From Macrostomum hystrix (lineage: Eukaryota > Animalia > Platyhelminthes), in the NCBI GenBank assembly GCA_950097015.1, contig CATNEN010000031.1, forward strand, positions 2,914,001-2,978,000: a stretch of DNA of 64,000 nt, written 5' to 3'. Both the position numbers and the translations under genes were made by a program. Within the stretch, counting starts at the first letter, position 1. The number at the start of each line of letters is the position of its first letter. Of this stretch, positions 28,276 to 39,100 are shown piece after piece. The notes below the pieces were generated by a model. That model had not been told where the DNA came from. It did no database searches and worked only from the letters and a program-made list of their open reading frames with translations.

Positions 28276-29083
28276 CCCATGCTGTAGACAGTTAAGCAAA
28301 GTACACATGCAAACATATCAGTGATCGGTATTAAAAAAATAATCACGGATGTTATAGGACTTGTCAGAAAAGTCAAAATCTGTCTTTATCCATAGTCTAT
28401 ATTGTGCGCACATATCATGCCGAAAGATAGGCCTGCAGAGCATCAAATTAAACATAAATAAAAAATGTGTGCGACTCCAACCTCTTTAAAAAAAAAACTA
28501 ATTACATTGTAGTTAGATAGTTGCAATGCACAAGTAAAATACAATATTTCTGACTCGAAGCATCTAATTATCTTTAATTCATATTTCGTAAACAGAACAA
28601 CAATATCATGCGTTTTTAGAAGTAAAAGGTAAAAAACGAAAAAATGAAATTGCACTTTATTTGATGACTCAAAAACAAAACAGAGCGACACAGTGACTCA
28701 GCGCAGCAGTGAAAATTGGCATGAGGACTAGGAAAAAATAATTTTTTAGTCCTATACGATTAATATATATTGCGCGAAGATCCTATTATCAGTAGAGAAG
28801 CACACAATATTACTTCTCTAATTACGCTCATAGATCGTAAATCATGTTTTTCGCAACACTAAACAATATGAAAACTATAATAAACCTCAATAATACTAAT
28901 TATCTCTCGTTAAATAAGAAAGCAGGACGTAGACGAGCGCAAATCGTCCTTATCTGTCCCAGCCAATCAGCAAACAGGCCGATATATCTTGTTTCTAGCT
29001 CAGCCAATCAGCGAGTAGACCTAACATTAATTATGCTTATTCGGGTTCAGCCAATCAGCGAACACAACAGGTTCAACAGGCAG

Positions 29084-29407
29084 TTAGCCAACAGTCTCCG
29101 CTGGCACGAGGCGCATTCCCGCCACAGTCTGGAAGTAGATGAGGCCGGAGGACACGGCCAGCAGGGAGAACAGCACAAGGAGCACAACCCTTGGCACGTA
29201 CATGGTGTCAAACACGGCGCTGCGGTCAGCCAGCTGAGAGTCGCCACGCGGCAGGGTGACCAAAACGGCGGTGATGATGCCAACTATCAGCAGGAATGGC
29301 ACTCCGGCAAAACGGATACTCGAGTGAGTCCTGGCCGTGAACACCAGCAGCAGCAGGGCCAGGCCCCACAGCACCGCTAGCAATATGAGCCCTGTGCCGA
29401 TGGTCGC
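29084..29407 (-). CDS. TMEM218: TMEM218-like membrane protein, paralog B (107 aa from the acceptor; no own start codon)
   Basis: ATIGTGLILLAVLWGLALL...RFAGVPFLLIVGIITAVLVTLPR...VFDTMYVPRVVLLVLFS matches human TMEM218 as recalled (GVGAGVFILALLW...[23 protein letters not shown]...VDDFFIGRYVLL); starts right after ttttctag. Confidence 0.75.
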   Translation of the reverse strand, partial: ATIGTGLILLAVLWGLALLLLVFTARTHSSIRFAGVPFLLIVGIITAVLVTLPRGDSQLADRSAVFDTMYVPRVVLLVLFSLLAVSSGLIYFQTVAGMRLVPAETVG

Positions 29408-30227
29408 CTAGAAAATATCACGGGAATTCGGGGACAAAATGTGAAAATACTCAACTAATGCTACTTTTAGTAGGGGTAAATTAAAACTGATTCTTACGTT
29501 ATAGTTACGTTTTTTACTTTTAGATCTTGTCGTTGTAAATCACTATTGATTAAAAAATCTTAAGACAGTTATGCAAATGAAGATGATAAATATGTAAGCC
29601 AAATGAAGAACATATGAAAGTCAAACACCTATATCTTTATTTCTTTTAAGAATAAGTAAAAAACCAATGAGAATGTAAACTATAATTATAAAACGTGAAA
29701 TTGCACAGCATAACTAAAAATGATGACTAGTGTGAAATACAACCTCGGATTAATTTAGATCGAGTGTAGAAATTACATGAACACGAAGCATTAGGACTAT
29801 TCTTGCGTTGAGCACTGCTTAACTTATTAAGCTTTTGTAAATACCGCTGAAGACCAACTAGATCAAAGGTAAAAGTTTAGAATTTTGAGTTTGCTGCAAA
29901 TTTGCATACTTTTTGTGACCCTGAAAAGTCGGATGCTTCAAAGAAGTGCATGTAGCATTTTATACATTGTTTGTCGGGAGTTCTGGTAATCAGGGGTGGT
30001 GGGTGGGACCTGTGATTGGTCAATCGGAGTGTATAATCAGGGGTGGCTGGTGGGGCCCGTGATTGGTCAGTCGGGTGTACAAGCAGGGGTGGCAGTTAGG
30101 GCACATGATTGGTCAGTGAGGTGTACTAGCAGGGGTGGCGGGTGGGGCTGTTGTTTTGGTCAGTTGGGTGTACAAGCAGGGGTGGCGGGTGGGGCCTGTG
30201 ATTGGCCAGTGCATTGTGTTTCAGTTC

Positions 30228-30596
30228 TCAAATTCGAAGCGGCCTAGAAGCTGTCGCATGCAGCAAAGCCAGCTGCTGGAAGACGGTTGAGGCGAACGCT
30301 AGCGATAAGCCAGCCATCAGGCCGGCCCGACCAATCAGCATAAAGTCGACGGTAGCGGGGTCGGCCATTGGGCCAGATGGTCTTGGCATGCTGAGCAGTA
30401 CGACTGAGCTGAGAAGAGCTGCGGCAGTAATGCACAAGCCGACAGTTCGCCAGCTGGTTGAGGACTTCAGGCGGGCGGCCAGCAGCCAGGCCAGCAGGGC
30501 CAGGCACCACAGGCAGGCCAGGGCGACGATGCCTGGTCCGACACCATAGACCAGTGTGATAGCCTGCAAGGTGTTGAAATTCGGGCCCATGGTCAT
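30228..30596 (-). CDS. TMEM218: TMEM218-like membrane protein, paralog A (122 aa from ATG 30596, or 111 aa from the acceptor at 30563)
   Basis: LVYGVGPGIVALACLW...SVVLLSMPR...VDFMLIGRAGLM matches TMEM218 motifs as recalled; three hydrophobic segments. Confidence 0.82.
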   Translation of the reverse strand: MTMGPNFNTLQAITLVYGVGPGIVALACLWCLALLAWLLAARLKSSTSWRTVGLCITAAALLSSVVLLSMPRPSGPMADPATVDFMLIGRAGLMAGLSLAFASTVFQQLALLHATASRPLRI

Positions 30597-30739
30597 AAGA
30601 TTTAAGAGTAAAAGGAAAAAAACAATATTAAAAACTGATTGTAGAACTTAGGCTATTTAAGTTCAAACTCTGATGACAAAAACTAATTAAACAGACATTA
30701 TATTTATAATAATTATTAATTTATTTTTTGACCTGGCCC

Positions 30740-31000
30740 TAATTGGGTCACATGTGCAGCCGACAGCACAGCCGCAGCTATTGCCCGGCGTATCTGAAGG
30801 CTGCGCACGGCTGTTCAGTCCATGGACTCGGGGGACGCCGAACCCGCCATCAATTACCCAGCTAACGACAGTAGCAATTATCATCTGAGCGAACTGAAGC
30901 AATCTAGACACAAACTGTTTCAGTGGAGTCGAGAACCAAACCAACGCCGTTTAAAGGCGTGAGTCAGTCGCTCTAACCACTAGGCTAAAACCCCTCCATT
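30740..31000 (-). mobile_element. tRNA-derived SINE, family 2
   Basis: Reverse complement gives ggaggggttttagcctagtggttagagcg...gactccactgaaacag, homologous to the 19830 and 37431 copies. Confidence 0.7.
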
Positions 31001-33120
31001 GTAGCCTAGGCATTATGAAACAAATGAAACATGGTTTTAATTAGCTAACTTCAGTGATAATAATTTAGTCATTATTGATGATAAAGTCCGTTGATTGCAG
31101 TCATTAAAACAATCGACGCAGAAAAAAAGTAGATTCAAATTGACAAAATCGACTTATCAAAATACCTAAGTATCTGTATTTTTTCATAAAAAATATGTCA
31201 ATACTGATAACTATTATATACTCTACAAGTTTAGGAAAAACAGGTCATAGATAAAAATTAGCAATGAAAGATACTTATAAAGAGTTACATTCTTGTGCAA
31301 CATTTACAATTCTGAAGCTTGGAAAATCCTGGCATCTAGTTTCTGGACAGCATATTGACATCTAAAATACATTTATATTCAAAATTTATAAAATGCATAG
31401 CTTAGAGGGACAAAATATAAAAATGCCAGATATAAAAAATGTCAAACATTTTACAATGTCTTAATGACTAATAACATGAAGAAACTAGATAACATGCTGT
31501 TTTGTATAGATAAAGAATTGCAAATTATTTTTTTTTAGTAATAAAAAGCATCAAGGCTGGAATTATTGCATTAAATTTGATTCCAATGATTCGGTTAATA
31601 AATATTTCATGACATGACTTTCACGAATGACATGAAGCATCGGAAAAATTAGCATCCACTATACTAAAAATGAGATGAGGACACTGGACACCGGTGTCTT
31701 TCCTTCTTACCAAAGGTACTTCTTGGGATTGATTTTTTAATTGTTAATTTATAATTAAAACTGTATATAAAATTCATTTTGTTTGAAATTACCACCTATA
31801 AGTGGGTATAACCTCAACCATTTTCTTATTGGAAGACTAAGTATATTGGAAATCATGACATCAAGTTTCTCCGAACAGAAAAATGTTTTTATTCGATACT
31901 CAGCGTCCAGAAACGCAAGTACTGCAGCATGTAAATGAAGGGAACATGGTTAATGTATTAGCCATACAGGAATTATAATTTATAAACTAAGATTCCTTTC
32001 TACCAAAAAATAAGTCGACTCAATTTTTTATAAAAAAATTGTTTTATAAAATTTGCCTCAGGAGAATAAGTATTAGTTAAATATACATTCAACGTTAAAC
32101 TTAAACTCAAGGATAGTGTCTCTTATTGCCGAATAGGTTTCTTTTGTTTAACTATCATAAGCTTACGGTCGCGTTTTACGACATCACGTCCTTTTACTAA
32201 TTGTAACAACCGATTGTTTGTAAGCAAAGCACTTTTCGTTTACAAGCAAAAATATTAAGAGCATAATTGTTATTGCAGAAATTCATATTGAAAGCTAAGT
32301 TTATGCCCAAAGTTACACCCAATCAAAGACTAAATAGCATCACTGTTGTAAGCAGTAAGCAATACTAAATATGTAAGCAGTACTAAATAATGACTTACGC
32401 ATTGCAAAATGTCAATAGTTTTTATAAAATTAAGTGGATTTTACGTAAGAATTCGTAACTCGAGAAAGCTATATAAGTCGCTCGCTGCGGGTCCACTGTC
32501 ACGATATGATTGCGAGTGCCCAGCCCCCCAGCAAAAAGAATTATTTTTTAGCTATACGCTCGTATTAAGCTATTAGCTATACAGTGATACACTGTTAATG
32601 AGCGCTGCTAAGTAGTAAAGAAGCATCAGTAAATATAAAGAAAGTTTTTTTCTGTGACGTTTGCATAATAAAACGATTAAAATAGCACTTTTGTTGAACG
32701 GTGCCGCTTGTTCCAATTGCGATTTTATGCCAAATTACGTTTGCTTCATCGAATAAAGAAATAACATAAAGAAACGACGAGTTATCCAAATTCAAGGTTA
32801 TCTGGTGAACTAATTAGGCAAAAAGACATGAGCTATTGCTTGTATTTATATTTATTTGCTCTAAAAATGTGTGTTTTTAATGCCATTAGTTTATCTCGCT
32901 TACCACTCGCTACGCTTGCCGAGCTACACTGACTTAACCAAGTAAAAGGGACACAGAACACGGTGCATATTAACCAGCTTTCCGTATTAAAAACACAAAT
33001 CGATTGAAAGATTAAAGCCGACTATTTTACCCAACTAAAACATTAAGCAGTTTTCAAAAAACACGTAGAAAATTGAGTCAGTTGCAGCATCGCCTTTACA
33101 AAATAAACAGGCTAAGCCAA

Positions 33121-36100
33121 TCAGATCACTTTGTATCGACCCGGCAGGCGATTCAGCTGGGTAGAGGACTGCAGCCTTAGCAGCTCCTCTTTGACCACTC
33201 GGGTGATCTCCTTCTTGGCATTCTGAATGTTCATATCGGACAGCGATTCTACTAGCAGGTAGAGCGGCCGTTCGGCAGCCTCGGCAGCTTCGGGAGTTGG
33301 CGGCGGCGGCGGACGTTGCGCCATGAAGACGCCGCGGACGGAGATGCCAACGTCGCACAGTTCAGAGAGGTTGCCAAGGAACTCCCGGCTGGTTAGGCGC
33401 CAGCGCACATTCTGAGGAAAGTCGTTGATCTCCAGCTCAACTTCGTAGCTGAAAAAATATAGAACACAATTTTATTTGGCAGTATGCTCAGCCTAAACAG
33501 CATGGACATGCTTGAAATTTCCGAGTTTGAAAGAATCATGCTTGAAAGCGATGTTAGAATTATCCGTACCGTTTAACCGTAACCTGTTCAACTTCGACTG
33601 GCGTCTCCTCAACAGGCCGATAGCCCAGGCGAACGTTGAGCCGTTCGGCCATCTGATTAGCCAGAGTTCTGCTGCTAACGGCTATTGACGAAGGCGTCAA
33701 GCCAGACGGGCCGTACATCACAGACATGGCAGCCTGCAAATGTGCAATTTAAGTGAGACCGATTAGTTGCTATGGGATAGGGATCTTGAACCAGGATGGG
33801 AGAATTGAAGCCTCTTGTTAGCGGGATGGGGATCCGGAATCAGATTGGGAGAATTGAAGCCACTTGGTAGCAGGATGGGGATCTAGAATTAGGATGGGAG
33901 AATTGAAGCCCCATGGTAGCGAGATGGGGATCTTGAACCAGGATGGGAGAATTGAAGCCCCTTGGAAGCGTGATGGGGATCTACAATGATGGGAGAATTG
34001 AAGCCCATTGGAAGCGTGATGGGATCTACAATCAGGATGGGAGAATTGAAGCCCCTTGGAAGCGTGATGGGATCTACAATCAGGATGGGAGAATTGAAGC
34101 CCATTGGAAGCGTGATGGGGATTTGGAGTCAGAATGGGAGAATTGAAGCCCCTTGCTGCGACAAAAATAATTCAAATTAGCGCCAACCTGCTGTGTTGCA
34201 TCCTCCTGACGCCCCGCATTCAGCCGCTTAGCCCGATCCATTGCTAGGCGGAGCTTCTGCTGCAGCTCGTCATTCTGCGGCTCCGCAGTGGCAGAATGCG
34301 GAGCTGCCGGCTCCTGTCTGGCAGCCGAAGCGGCAGCGCCAAACGGAGCAGCTCCGCTGCCGACGTTGCCGGCGGCCCAATTGGCAGTGATAGCGGCAGC
34401 CGCCGCGGCAGCAGCAGCAGCAGCCGGGGTAGACGGAACAGCTGCCGCTGGCGACGGCAGGACTGAGCCATCGGAGGTCGCGGCGGCGGAGGTTGTTGCG
34501 CCAGATGCGGCCGACGATGTGGACGGAGCGCCGGGCGCCACATCCTTGACGCGCTGCCTCGGCGCGAACAGCTCCTCGATGTGGTCGTCAATGTTGTCGG
34601 CCTCATCGTCGGAGTCCTGGAGTCCCATTGAGGCCTTCTGCAGCTTCTTGCGCTCCTTTACTAGGCGAGATTCCTCATCGTCAAAGGCGTAGCCCTTGCA
34701 CCGACGGTTGAAACCGCTAGCGCTGCGCACCTGAGGAGAATGAGATTGTTTTAGCGATTGGGGATTACTTGCCTGAAAAATGAAAATATTGTTAGAAAAT
34801 AAACAGTGGAACTCACTGTCTTGCCCTCAGCCTCCATCCTCTGGACGTAGGCGTCCCAAAGCGCCTGCAGGTTAGCTGGCACCGGAGCCTGGGCCAGCTT
34901 CAGCGCCTTGATCAAATCGCCGGCGTGCTTCTCCTGGTCGCGAGTGATGAAAGTCACCGCGTGGCCAGTGTTGCCAGCGCGACCAGTTCTGGGAGGGTGG
35001 GAGAAATGGTATAACTCTGAGAAAACGAACAACTTTTGTAACAGAACTCGTACGATCCCGGGATTTAACAAAAGTGAAAGTACTGTTGCAAAAGCAAAAG
35101 TGCTCAAGAACTATTGGTGACTCAGTTGCTGGCGCAGGCAGTGCTCATCTTGGGACTTGGCTGGGATTGCCAGTCTTAAGCTGGGACTTAATCTTGGGAT
35201 TTTGAAGAGTGACAGTCCTGATCTTGGGATTTTGAAGAGTGACAGTCCTAATCTTGGGATTTTGAAGAGTGACAGTCCTGATCTTGGGATTTTGAAGAGC
35301 GACAGTCCTAATCTTGGGATTTTGAAGAGTGGCATTCCTAATCTTGGGATCTTGAAGAGAGTGACAGTCCTAATCTAAAGGGATCTTGAAGAGAGTGACA
35401 GTCCTAATCTTGGGATCTTGAAGAGAGTGACAGTCCTAATATTGGGAACTTGAAGAGAGTGACAGTCCTAATCTTGGGATCTTGAAGAGAGTGACAGTCC
35501 TAATATTGGGAACTTGAAGAGAGTGACAGTCCTAATCTTGGGATTTTGAAGAGTGGCATTCCTAATCTTGGGATTTTGAAGAGTGACAGTCCTAATCTTG
35601 GGATCTTGAAGATAGTGACAGTCCTAATCTTGGGATCTTGAAGAGAGTGACAGTCGTAATCTTGGGATCTTGTAGATAGTGACAGTCCTAATCTTAGGGT
35701 ATCTTGAAGAGAGTGACAGTCCTAATCTTGGGATTTTGAAGAGAGTGACAGTCCTAATCTTGGGATCTTGAAGAGAGTGACAGTCCTAATCTTGGGATCT
35801 TGAAGAGAGTGACAGTCCTAATCTTGGGATCTTGAAGAGAGTGACAGTCCTAATATTGGGATCTGGGATCTGGGAGTCGTGACTCACCTGCCGCATCGAT
35901 GCACATAGTCTTCGTAGTGATTCGGGCAGTCGTAATTGACCACTAGGATGAGGCCGGTGACGTCAAGTCCGCGGGCGGCGACGCTGGTGGCGATGAGCAG
36001 CCGGGAGTCGCCACGCTTGAAGGCGGTGATGACGCTGTCCCGATCGTACTGGTCAATGCCGCCGTGCAGCGACAAGCAGGGATAGGCGTGCTTCATCAGC

Positions 36101-39100
36101 AGCTTCATGAGCTCGTCGGCTTTCTCCTGCCTGTCGACAAAGATGAGGCAGCCGCCGCGCTCCTGATAGACGCCGAGGAGTTCCAGCAGCTTGAAGAACT
36201 TATCATCCTCCGTCAGCAGGATGATCTCCTGTTGAACCTCGCTGCACACAACCGCCCGACCGCCTACCACCACCTCAATGGGTGAGTCCAGCACTTTGCG
36301 GGCCAGGATTTCCATCTGGCGCGGGAATGTCGCGCTAAACATCACAGTCTGGCGATCCGGCCGGATCGACTCCACGATCTTCATCACCTGAGGGTGCGGG
36401 CGAATTTCGTATCAATAAAAAGTGCCGTTAAACTACTGACTTGAATGGAATAAATAAGTAGTATAATATGATGAGGTATTCGCCAAGGCCTTGGCGGCGT
36501 TTCTGACCGCGTCGCATTTTCTGCTAACGGACGTTAGGCAAGGACCCTGGAAATGCAGACATTAGTTCATTTAATACACGTAAGAGCATTGCTGGAACTC
36601 CTTGACACTTCCGTTATAATATACTACTTAAACAGCTAGTAGTATACCCGATTGGATGAGGTTGGCAAAAACACAGATCTGCAGAAATCGATTAACAATA
36701 GCACAATGGAGCGGGCTGAAATAGCAGAGCGGAGTGCATAAACAACACACTGGATAAAAAGCACTAGAAGCCTACGGTTGCTGCAGCTCTCTGGCATAGC
36801 TATAGCACACAAAAATGCAGATCCAGGACGCCCTCACTCACCGACCAGCCGGCTAAAAGGTGGGCCCGGCGCGCTCAGGATTCTCTTGCTTGGTTGTCTA
36901 TTACCAAGAGAATTCCCGGCTGATCTAGCCCATCCAGCTGAAATAGAGTGAGTTTTCAATGTCTCTAAAATACACTACCGCTCCGCCCCGCCCGGAGAAT
37001 AGTATAAACGAGCCCGCCTCACCTGCGGCTCGAATCCCATGTCGAACATTCGATCGGCCTCGTCAAGTACGCAGAAGGTGGTCCGTCGCAGATTGGTGAC
37101 CCGGCCTGCGTTGGCGGCCAGCATGTCAATCATGCGGCCCGGCGTGCAGACAACAATCTCGCAGCCGCGCTTGAGCTCGGCAATCTGCTCAGAGATGCCC
37201 GTACCGCCGTAGACGCAGACAACGCGCAGTCGAAGATGCTTGGCAAACTTCTTGGCCTCCTTGAATATCTGCAGAGCCAGCTCGCGAGTTGGCGTCATCA
37301 CCACCGCCATAGGGCCTTCGCCAGACTCCAGCGGTGGCTGCGCCCGGATGTGCACCAGCAGAGGCAGCAGGAAGGCCAGGGTCTTGCCGGAGCCGGTTGC
37401 TGCGATGCCAATCATGTCTCTGGGGCGTTTGAGAGGGGTTGTGTGTGGCCTATTGGTTAGAGTGTCGGACTGGCGACTTGAAGGTGGGGGGTTCGATTCC
37501 CGATTCCACTGGAACAATTTGTGCCCTTTAGAAAGACACTAAAATATCTGCATAGCTTCAATTCACTCAGCTGATTGGTTGGAACTAGAATATTTGAGGC
37601 TTGGGTGTGACGTATGAGATAAGGTGTGTCAGATGCTGCTAACTGAGTATCCAAATGAGATATGGTGTGTCAGATGCTGCTAACTGAGTATCCAAATGAG
37701 ATAAGGTGTGTCAGATGCTGCTAACTGAGTATCCAAATGAGATAAGGTGTTTCAGATGCTGCTAACTGAGTATCCAAATGAGATACGGTGTATCAGATGC
37801 TGCTAACTGAGTATCCAAATGAGATATGGTGTGTCAGATGCTGCTAACTGAGTATCCAAATGAGATAAGGTGTGTCAGATGCTGCTAACTGAGTATCCAA
37901 ATGAGATAAGGTGTGTCAGATGCTGCTAACTGAGTATCCAAATGAGATAAGGTGTGTCAGATGCTGCTAACTGAGTATCCAAATGAGATATGGTGTGTCA
38001 GATGCTGCTAACTGAGTATCCAAATGAGATAAGGTGTGTCAGATGCTGCTAACTGAGTATCCAAATGAGATAAGGTGTGTCAGATGCTGCTAACTGAGTA
38101 TCCAAATGAGATAAGGTGTGTCAGATGCTGCTAACTGAGTATCCAAATGAGATAAGGTGTGTCAGATGCTGCTAACTGAGTATCCAAATGAGATACGGTG
38201 TATCAGATGCTGCTAACTGAGTATCCAAATGAGATAAGGTGTGTCAGATGCTGCTAACTGAGTATCCAAATGAGATAAGGTGTATCAGATGCTGCTAACT
38301 GAGTATCCAAATGAGATAAGGTGTATCAGATGCTGCTAACTGAGTATCCAAATGAGATAAGGTGTGTCAGATGCTGCTAACTGAGTATCCAAATGAGATA
38401 AGGTGTATCAGATGCTGCTAACTGAGTATCCAAATGAGATATGGTGTGTCAGATGCTGCTAACTGAGTATCCAAATGAGATAAGGTGTGTCAGATGCTGC
38501 TAACTGAGTATCCAAATGAGATAAGGTGTTTCAGATGCTGCTAACTGAGTATCCAAATGAGATACGGTGTATCAGATGCTGCTAACTGAGTATCCAAATG
38601 AGATAAGGTGTGTCAGATGCTGCTAACTGAGTATCCAAATGAGATACGGTGTATCAGATGCTGCTAACTGAGTATCCAAATGAGATAAGGTGTGTCAGAT
38701 GCTGCTAACTGAGTATCCAAATGAGATAAGGTGTGTCAGATGCTGCTAACTGAGTATCCAAATGAGATAAGGTGTGTCAGATGCTGCTAACTGAGTATCC
38801 AAATGAGATAAGGTGTATCAGATGCTGCTAACTGAGTATCCAAATGAGATAAGGTGTATCAGATGCTGCTAACTGAGTATCCAAATGAGATAAGGTGTAT
38901 CAGATGCTGCTAACTGAGTATCCAAATGAGATAAAAAACTGATGATTAAAAAGAGAAAAGGAAGATGTCATGCCATTGACTCGTTCTAGAGCCATTTCAA
39001 ATCTAAGAGCATTGGACCCTATGACACTACTCAAAAGTAGAAATAAAAACTTTTAGAGTCGTTCTCACAGAGTCGCTTGAGTAGTCAATGAAAAGCTACA

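What the first reader, a model, noticed from the sequence alone, without database searches (positions are those of the whole stretch)
29084..30596. Tandem TMEM218 paralogs that appear to take their start codon from a spliced leader
Seen: two homologous 3-TM ORFs on the minus strand (WCLALLAWLLAARLKSS vs WGLALLLLVFTARTHSS; LLSMPR vs LVTLPR), about 820 bp apart. Each begins exactly after a pyrimidine-rich AG acceptor in phase 0 with an Ala codon: ttgcag|GCT at 30563 and ttttctag|GCG at 29407. Paralog B has an in-frame TAG immediately upstream and no Met until its last third. Paralog A ends in its own stop, and I found no suitable splice donor to join A to B. Established: flatworm spliced-leader exons end in AUG, which can act as the initiator, and human TMEM218 (ciliary transition zone) begins MAGTVLGVGAG as recalled. 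Inference: adding AUG at the acceptors gives MAITLVYGVGPG and MATIGTG, matching the homolog's N-terminus. Paralog B may therefore be an obligately trans-spliced gene invisible to ORF callers, and TMEM218 has duplicated and diverged here. I found no ATG|GT micro-exon in 30600-33100.
Basis: partly seen in the sequence, partly recalled or inferred. Interest (0 to 1): 0.75.

Follow-up and report, generated by a model that had tools for sequence, protein, structure and literature searches.

The report
Flatworm TMEM218 genes borrowing leader AUG
Two neighbouring copies of the small ciliary membrane gene TMEM218 in the flatworm Macrostomum hystrix (plus a third copy elsewhere) open directly at a splice acceptor without the expected start codon, and most likely take it from the AUG that ends the worm's trans-spliced leader, a habit known in flatworms since 2006.

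Summary
The window comes from the published Macrostomum hystrix assembly. On the minus strand lie two single-exon TMEM218-family ORFs, 820 nt apart. Each starts with an Ala codon directly after an AG: ttgcag|GCT at 30563 and ttttctag|GCG at 29407. Copy B passes Pfam's TMEM218_N cut-off. Copy A falls just below it but links to B and C by profile comparison (97%). I found a third copy (C) on contig C1 with the same layout (ctgcag|GCT, TAA three codons upstream).

The genome carries many SL RNA genes whose exon ends ...TTGCATG|GTAAG. No consensus cis donor ending in ATG lies upstream of any copy. The M. lignano orthologues of A and B are deposited as 'partial' proteins that begin at exactly that Ala. 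That is the result expected from a transcript pipeline that trims the leader together with its ATG.

The spliced-leader reading is therefore well supported, at about 0.78.

One correction: copy A also has its own in-frame ATGs 9 and 11 codons upstream, so only B and C are strictly ATG-less.

The mechanism is known, and this scan has already noted it for several other genes of this genome. This is a new example, not a new kind.

The parts
30231..30563 (-). TMEM218 paralogue A: single coding exon of 111 codons from Ala (GCT) to the last sense codon; stop at 30228-30230
   Evidence: TMEM218_N 24 bits, residue 4 = profile position 4. (hhalign 97% to the B/C clade). (M. lignano orthologue P0002, 58% identity).
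30564..30625 (-). Proposed trans-splice acceptor of A: pyrimidine tract (tgtttttttccttttactctt) followed by the first AG downstream (ccttgcag)
   Evidence: ttgcag fits the M. lignano trans-acceptor motif [T/C]TNCAG (PMC8629364).
30588..30596 (-). Two in-frame genomic ATGs of A (30596 and 30590; the second in accATGg context). They would give an 11- or 9-residue non-homologous N-terminal extension if the acceptor is not used.
   Evidence: The extension is absent from the M. lignano orthologue.
29991..30211 (.). 46-bp tandem repeat (4.7 copies) in the A-B spacer; on the gene strand each unit carries CCAAT and a GC-rich box
29636..29641 (-). Only AATAAA between A's stop and B's acceptor, 586 nt after A's stop and about 230 nt before B's acceptor
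29408..29415 (-). Proposed trans-splice acceptor of B (ttttctag); its TAG is an in-frame stop directly before the first codon
29087..29407 (-). TMEM218 paralogue B: single coding exon of 107 codons from Ala (GCG); stop at 29084-29086; no Met before residue 69
   Evidence: (33.5 bits, above the cut-off of 27). (M. lignano orthologue P0001, 76% identity, starts ATVGSG).
30740..31010 (.). GC-rich block upstream of A that could be mistaken for an exon. It is a dispersed SINE-like repeat.
   Evidence: 1202 first-look candidates, 40 scored copies at 75-86% identity across contigs.
31819..31826 (-). The only ATG|GT between DDX46 and A's acceptor (aaaatg|gttgag); a poor donor
   Evidence: The consensus donor is GT[G/A]AG.

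Best explanation
These are genes of the TMEM218 family (small three-pass membrane proteins; the family is known as a ciliary transition-zone component). The mature mRNAs are made by trans-splicing the Macrostomum spliced leader onto an acceptor that sits in phase 0 directly before the Ala-2 codon. The leader's last three bases, AUG, then serve as the initiator, giving M-AITLVYGVGPG... for A, M-ATIGTGLILLAV... for B and M-ALVLGVGVG... for the unlinked copy C. B and C have a stop just upstream and no usable Met, so they depend on the leader. A can in principle also start at its own upstream ATG when it is not trans-spliced. A and B may be co-transcribed as a two-gene operon resolved by the leader.

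Shown: the gene anatomy, family membership, the SL genes ending in ATG|GT, the lack of cis donors, and the orthologous models that start at the same codon.
Inferred: that the leader is joined at these two sites in M. hystrix, and that its AUG is translated.
For: - Genome identity: 220,453,370 bases in 42 contigs equals the M. hystrix assembly.
- SL genes: 19 exact copies of ...CAATTTATTGCATG|GTAAG, with three predicted hairpins and an Sm-like site. The exon matches the SL assembled from M. hystrix RNA.
- About 10-20% of M. hystrix genes are trans-spliced, and the assembly's authors note that the SL ends in a start codon.
- All three paralogues start at AG|GC[T/G]. Stops lie at -1 (B) and -3 (C).
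- GC content jumps from 0.26-0.31 to 0.52-0.62 exactly at the acceptor.
- The Pfam model aligns the Ala to profile positions 1-6 of TMEM218_N.
- The first internal Met lies after TM1, or after both TM1 and TM2, in all five proteins.
- No ATG|GT[AG]AG lies upstream.
- The GC-rich block upstream of A is a repeat, not an exon.
- The M. lignano orthologues P0001 (PAA47812.1 and others) and P0002 are 'partial' and begin ATVGSG... and AVPLVYGVGPG..., the very codon predicted.
- That annotation cuts transcripts at SL-read peaks after trimming the whole 35-nt SL, including its ATG.
- The mechanism was established by Cheng et al. 2006 J Biol Chem 281:733, as cited in PMC12582326 and PMC9851317.
Against:
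- B's acceptor is TAG, not the CAG of the commonest trans-acceptor motif.
- A has its own in-frame ATG in a good context.
- The M. lignano 'partial' models prove an exon or transcript boundary at that codon. They do not prove by themselves that the partner is the SL and not an unlinked cis exon.
- No M. lignano counterpart of copy C was found.
Confidence: 0.78

Rival explanations
1. A conventional cis-spliced 5' exon that ends in ATG supplies the start. It could be shared by A and B as alternative last exons, with a separate one for C.
For: The acceptor is a normal-looking splice site. An intron directly after the start codon is a common gene layout. One ATG|GT exists at 31821 upstream of A, and two lie within 3 kb of C.
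Against: None of these candidates fits GT[G/A]AG (gttgag, gtatat, gtttta). There is none at all in the 820 nt before B. The M. lignano transcript-based models of both genes contain no upstream exon and are left 5'-partial. A ends in its own stop and has a poly(A) signal before B.
Confidence: 0.1
2. Copy A is an ordinary gene translated from its own ATG at 30596 or 30590, with the AG at 30564 not used as an acceptor. Only B and C would need another explanation.
For: The frame is open from the ATG, with accATGg context and GC-rich third positions in the 11 codons.
Against: The 11 residues match nothing in the family profile. They are absent from the M. lignano orthologue, whose model starts at the Ala. 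The AG is the first one after a long pyrimidine tract and fits the trans-acceptor motif. Paralogues B and C have the acceptor at the same codon.
Confidence: 0.12
3. Copy B is a decaying duplicate (pseudogene) that lost its start codon, or it starts at a near-cognate codon such as TTG 29383.
For: There is no ATG, and a stop lies directly upstream. The acceptor is TAG, not CAG.
Against: - B has the best TMEM218_N score of the three.
- It has an intact 107-codon frame with GC3 of 0.78 in AT-rich surroundings.
- Its M. lignano orthologue is 76% identical and transcribed, and the first 12 residues (ATIGTGLILLAV against ATVGSGLILLAV) are conserved, upstream of any near-cognate start.
Confidence: 0.05

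Closest known systems
[quoted passage not shown]
   Same: The leader ends in AUG. The acceptor is in phase 0 before the first conserved codon. The recipient exon has no start codon of its own.
   Different: The 2006 work was done in Schistosoma mansoni with cDNAs and translation assays. Here the case is a free-living macrostomid, it rests on genome anatomy plus orthologous gene models, and it concerns a small paralogue family that shares the layout.
TMEM218 (Pfam PF25810 TMEM218_N), a ciliary transition-zone membrane protein of animals
   Same: About 110 residues, three hydrophobic segments, a G-x-G N-terminus, and a Pfam hit (B above the cut-off).
   Different: There are three diverged paralogues (33-38% identity), two of them in tandem. 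A scores below Pfam's cut-off. Localisation was not tested.
Macrostomum lignano BOX15_Mlig019803g1 (PAA47812.1, PAA54063.1, PAA66495.1) and BOX15_Mlig020715g1, 'hypothetical protein, partial'
   Same: These are orthologues of B (76%) and A (58%). They start at the same Ala and have no Met.
   Different: They are deposited without a name, a start codon or any comment on the leader. Whether they are adjacent in M. lignano could not be checked.
SL-resolved operons of Macrostomum (Ustyantsev & Berezikov 2021, PMC8629364)
   Same: A and B are on the same strand, 820 nt apart (below the 1-kb operon threshold), with a repeat in the spacer and a downstream gene that starts at an acceptor.
   Different: A polycistronic precursor was not shown. 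The spacer also carries CCAAT/GC-box repeats that could be B's own promoter.

Membership tests
TMEM218 family (PF25810) | Match to the TMEM218_N profile at or above the curated cut-off (27 bits) | tested here: met
   B scores 33.5 bits. Its orthologue P0001 scores 32.4. C scores 29.1 in the six-frame genome search and 26.6 as a protein.
TMEM218 family (PF25810) | The same match for copy A | tested here: inconclusive
   A scores 23.6-24.0 bits and P0002 14.2 bits, both below the cut-off. However, hhalign of A+P0002 against B+P0001+C gives 97% probability, E 6.5e-11, over 85 columns.
TMEM218 family (PF25810) | Small protein (about 110-115 aa) with three transmembrane segments | tested here: met
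   Kyte-Doolittle scan: three hydrophobic segments in A, B, C, P0001 and P0002.
TMEM218 family (PF25810) | Localisation to, and function at, the ciliary transition zone | not testable with these tools
   This needs tagging or knock-down in the worm.
SL-AUG-initiated mRNAs (flatworm slORFs) | The species has an SL RNA whose exon ends in AUG followed by a GU donor | tested here: met
   19 exact SL gene copies with ...GCATG|GTAAG, plus a variant array. The published M. hystrix SL ends in ATG.
SL-AUG-initiated mRNAs (flatworm slORFs) | AG acceptor in phase 0 directly before the first conserved codon, with no usable genomic AUG in the exon | tested here: met
   Met for B and C. For A the acceptor is present, but genomic ATGs lie 9 and 11 codons upstream in the would-be outron.
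SL-AUG-initiated mRNAs (flatworm slORFs) | SL-bearing transcripts joined at that acceptor | not testable with these tools
The only support is indirect: M. lignano transcript-based models start at the same codon and are 5'-partial.
SL-AUG-initiated mRNAs (flatworm slORFs) | Translation starts at the SL AUG | not testable with these tools
   This needs ribosome profiling or N-terminal proteomics.
SL-resolved operon | Same-strand neighbours less than 1 kb apart, with the downstream gene trans-spliced and a polycistronic precursor | tested here: inconclusive
   The spacing is 820 nt, with AATAAA 230 nt before B's acceptor. No precursor RNA was seen.

The most novel reading that the evidence does not exclude
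All three paralogues, including the unlinked copy C, keep the acceptor directly before Ala-2. Dependence on the leader's AUG would then predate the duplications and be locked in for this gene family. A and B would be co-transcribed as an operon of paralogues. A would additionally switch between a leader-started canonical protein and an own-ATG form with an extra N-terminal tail, which could change membrane insertion.
Probability: 0.25. Interest if true: 0.4.

Novelty: new member of a known kind. Interest (0 to 1): 0.3.

Why it matters
The main value is for annotation. ORF callers and standard pipelines will miss or truncate such genes. B and C have no ATG, and the M. lignano orthologues sit in GenBank as unnamed 'partial' proteins, so a conserved ciliary gene family looks absent or broken in macrostomids. 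The case also gives a clean small test set (three paralogues, one of which has a back-up ATG) for asking how strictly flatworm genes depend on the leader's AUG. It does not reveal a new mechanism.

Tried and rejected
The word searches returned only the M. lignano proteins, and nothing for copy C.
- SL-bearing genomic copies as a proxy for in-frame use of the SL AUG. The 11 loci fetched have the SL exon followed by short ORFs only (3-43 codons). Seven of them share the continuation GCT[TA]C[AG]ACTC[AG]CTT.. and look like one dispersed family. They say nothing on TMEM218.
- The GC-rich block at 30740-31010 as a possible 5' exon was rejected. It is a dispersed repeat, and ARAGORN finds no tRNA there.
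- Rfam on the whole window found no hit.
- A further TMEM218 copy: only three exist; a fourth match at E 0.4 was dismissed.
- The large profile search (search of protein representatives) was not used.
- I did not build or search a joined 'M + exon' or 'SL + exon' sequence. The exons were searched by reference only.

Full report
**Where the window comes from.** The window's assembly has 220,453,370 bases in 42 contigs. These are exactly the figures published for Macrostomum hystrix (Wiberg et al. 2023, PMC10468722). The window is C31:2914001-2978000.

**The observation.** On the minus strand, copy A reads ccttgcag|GCT ATC ACA CTG... from 30563 to a TGA at 30228-30230. Copy B reads ttttctag|GCG ACC ATC GGC... 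from 29407 to a TAA at 29084-29086. The gap between A's stop and B's first codon is 820 nt.
- B's acceptor TAG is itself an in-frame stop, and B's first Met is residue 69 of 107.
- A and B are 34% identical over 73 residues.
- Each copy has three hydrophobic segments.
- GC content rises from 0.29-0.31 upstream to 0.62 in both exons, exactly at the acceptor. GC3 is 0.67 for A and 0.78 for B.

- A has in-frame ATGs at 30596 and 30590 (accATGg) with no stop before the acceptor. A plain ORF caller therefore does find A as a 122-aa ORF.
- One ATG|GT does exist in 30600-33100, at 31821. Its donor (gttgag) is poor.

**Family.** Pfam TMEM218_N (PF25810, cut-off 27 bits) scores as follows:
- B: 33.5 bits.
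- A: 23.6-24.0 bits.
- A third copy, C, at C1:1376178: 29.1 bits in the six-frame genome search and 26.6 bits as a protein.

A profile of A with its orthologue matches a profile of B, its orthologue and C at 97% probability, E 6.5e-11. A profile search of the whole genome finds only these three copies. The Ala that follows each acceptor aligns to profile position 1 (A), 3 (C) or 6 (B) of the 60-position N-terminal model. The family's N-terminus therefore lies right at the acceptor.

**The third copy shows the same layout.** Copy C (L002:1501-1833) reads taa ctg cag|GCT TTG GTC CTG GGC GTT GGT. It has a stop three codons upstream, no ATG, and its first Met at residue 34. So three paralogues that are only 33-38% identical all have an AG directly before the Ala-2 codon where the family would have its Met codon. 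For unrelated sequence the chance of this is about (1/16)^3.

**Does the worm have the needed leader?** Yes.
- The 35-nt M. lignano SL (taken from PMC8629364) followed by GT occurs 19 times without mismatch in this genome.
- The gene reads ...CCGTAAAGACGGTCTCTTACTGCGAAGACTCAATTTATTGCATG|GTAAGACACCG.... It folds into three hairpins with an AUUUUUAG Sm-like stretch.
- The exon equals the SL assembled from M. hystrix RNA by the assembly's authors, who mark its final ATG as a start codon.
- They estimate that 10-20% of M. hystrix genes are trans-spliced.

**Is there a cis exon instead?** I found no credible one.
- No ATG|GT occurs in the 820 nt before B.
- Only the weak site at 31821 lies in the 2.6 kb between the end of DDX46 (stop at 33121-33123) and A.
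- For C there is none within 1.5 kb, and only gtatat and gtttta sites within 3 kb. The Macrostomum donor consensus is GT[G/A]AG.
- The one GC-rich block upstream of A (30740-31010) is a dispersed SINE-like repeat with over a thousand candidate copies, not an exon.
- The acceptors of A (ttgcag) and C (ctgcag) fit the top motif at M. lignano trans-splice sites, [T/C]TNCAG. B (ttctag) does not, but that motif covers only 9551 of 21,754 sites.

**Evidence from a related species.** The word search found one relative for each of A and B, and both are from M. lignano.
- P0001: BOX15_Mlig019803g1, accessions PAA47812.1, PAA54063.1 and PAA66495.1; 107 aa; 76% identical to B.
- P0002: BOX15_Mlig020715g1; 115 aa; 58% identical to A.

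Both are labelled 'partial' and have no Met. They start ATVGSGLILLAV... and AVPLVYGVGPG..., at exactly the codon that follows the acceptor in M. hystrix.

The M. lignano annotation is transcript-based. SL-containing reads are trimmed of the leader (the 35 nt include the ATG) and mapped. Transcripts are then cut at those peaks, and TransDecoder calls the ORFs (PMC5730564; PMC8629364). A 5'-partial ORF is called only when the frame is open to the transcript's first bases. Both models therefore say that the mature transcript begins at that Ala codon with no upstream exon attached. This is what a leader-started mRNA looks like after trimming.

These orthologues also show two further things.
- The A/B duplication is older than the split of the two species.
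- B is under constraint, including its first twelve residues. That argues against a pseudogene or a downstream near-cognate start.

A's 11-residue genomic extension has no counterpart in P0002.

**What is not shown.** I saw no M. hystrix RNA.
- The protein collection holds no M. hystrix transcript-derived product of A, B or C.
- The M. lignano models prove a transcript or exon boundary at that codon, not the identity of the partner.
The exons were searched by reference only.
- The large profile search was spared.

**Mechanism and its parts.**
- Most likely (0.78) the SL is joined at 30563 and 29407 (and at C1:1376178), and its AUG starts the three proteins. The following Ala would favour Met removal.
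- B and C have no alternative. A may keep a second, leader-independent start.
- A and B are 820 nt apart, below the 1-kb limit used for Macrostomum operons. A single AATAAA sits 230 nt before B's acceptor. An operon of the two paralogues is therefore plausible, at about even odds.
- The spacer also holds 4.7 copies of a 46-bp unit with CCAAT and GC boxes. This could instead be B's own promoter.

**Comparison with what is known.** Use of the flatworm SL's terminal AUG as initiator was shown in Schistosoma mansoni in 2006. That work is cited in PMC12582326 and PMC9851317, which report that the AUG is in frame in 28% of trans-spliced transcripts and that more than 40 cDNAs require it. Earlier notes of this scan report the same habit for several other genes of this genome, including TAF10, XPA, ARL5 and TMEM160. 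I did not test those notes and use them only as context. The present case is a further example, in a small ciliary gene family with three copies. Its value is for annotation and not as a new mechanism.

Noticed in passing
G000:C39:12.667-12.750 Mb (L030): A second SL RNA gene type sits in a 927-bp tandem array with at least 80 copies. Its exon ends ...GACTCTCTTTTTTGCATG|GTAAG, and its 5' flank and intron differ from the canonical gene. Each unit also carries a 5S rRNA gene (117.9 bits). The assembly paper reports a single SL for M. hystrix.
   Followed up: partly
G000:C15 and C17 (L005-L013): The canonical SL RNA genes recur every 11,645 bp in tandem repeats. A U1 snRNA gene (151.7 bits) lies about 300 bp from the SL gene on the same strand of the locus.
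   Followed up: partly
L019, L020, L022, L024, L028, L029 (C7, C38, C24, C1, C8): Dispersed copies of the full SL exon, including its transcribed 5' part (gccgtaaagac...). They are followed not by GTAAG but by a shared sequence GCTTCAACTCGCTTCGCTTCGTAAATCG.... They may be retro-copies of one trans-spliced RNA or a mobile element that carries the leader.
   Followed up: no
window 30740-31010: SINE-like dispersed repeat of about 270 bp with a tRNA-like head (ggggttttagcctagtggttagagcg...). There are over 1000 candidate copies in the genome at 75-86% identity. ARAGORN calls no tRNA.
   Followed up: partly
window 28960-29075 and 29991-30211; L002:2015-2030: CCAAT/ATTGG boxes are repeated around the TMEM218 copies. 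There are five CCAAT-plus-GC-box units after A, three gctgattggctg units after B, and one accaatcaca after C. Their role is unknown.
   Followed up: no
window 33121-36400 (-): The upstream neighbour on the same strand is the DEAD-box helicase DDX46/Prp5. It ends at 33121, and AATAAA follows near 32855.
   Followed up: no
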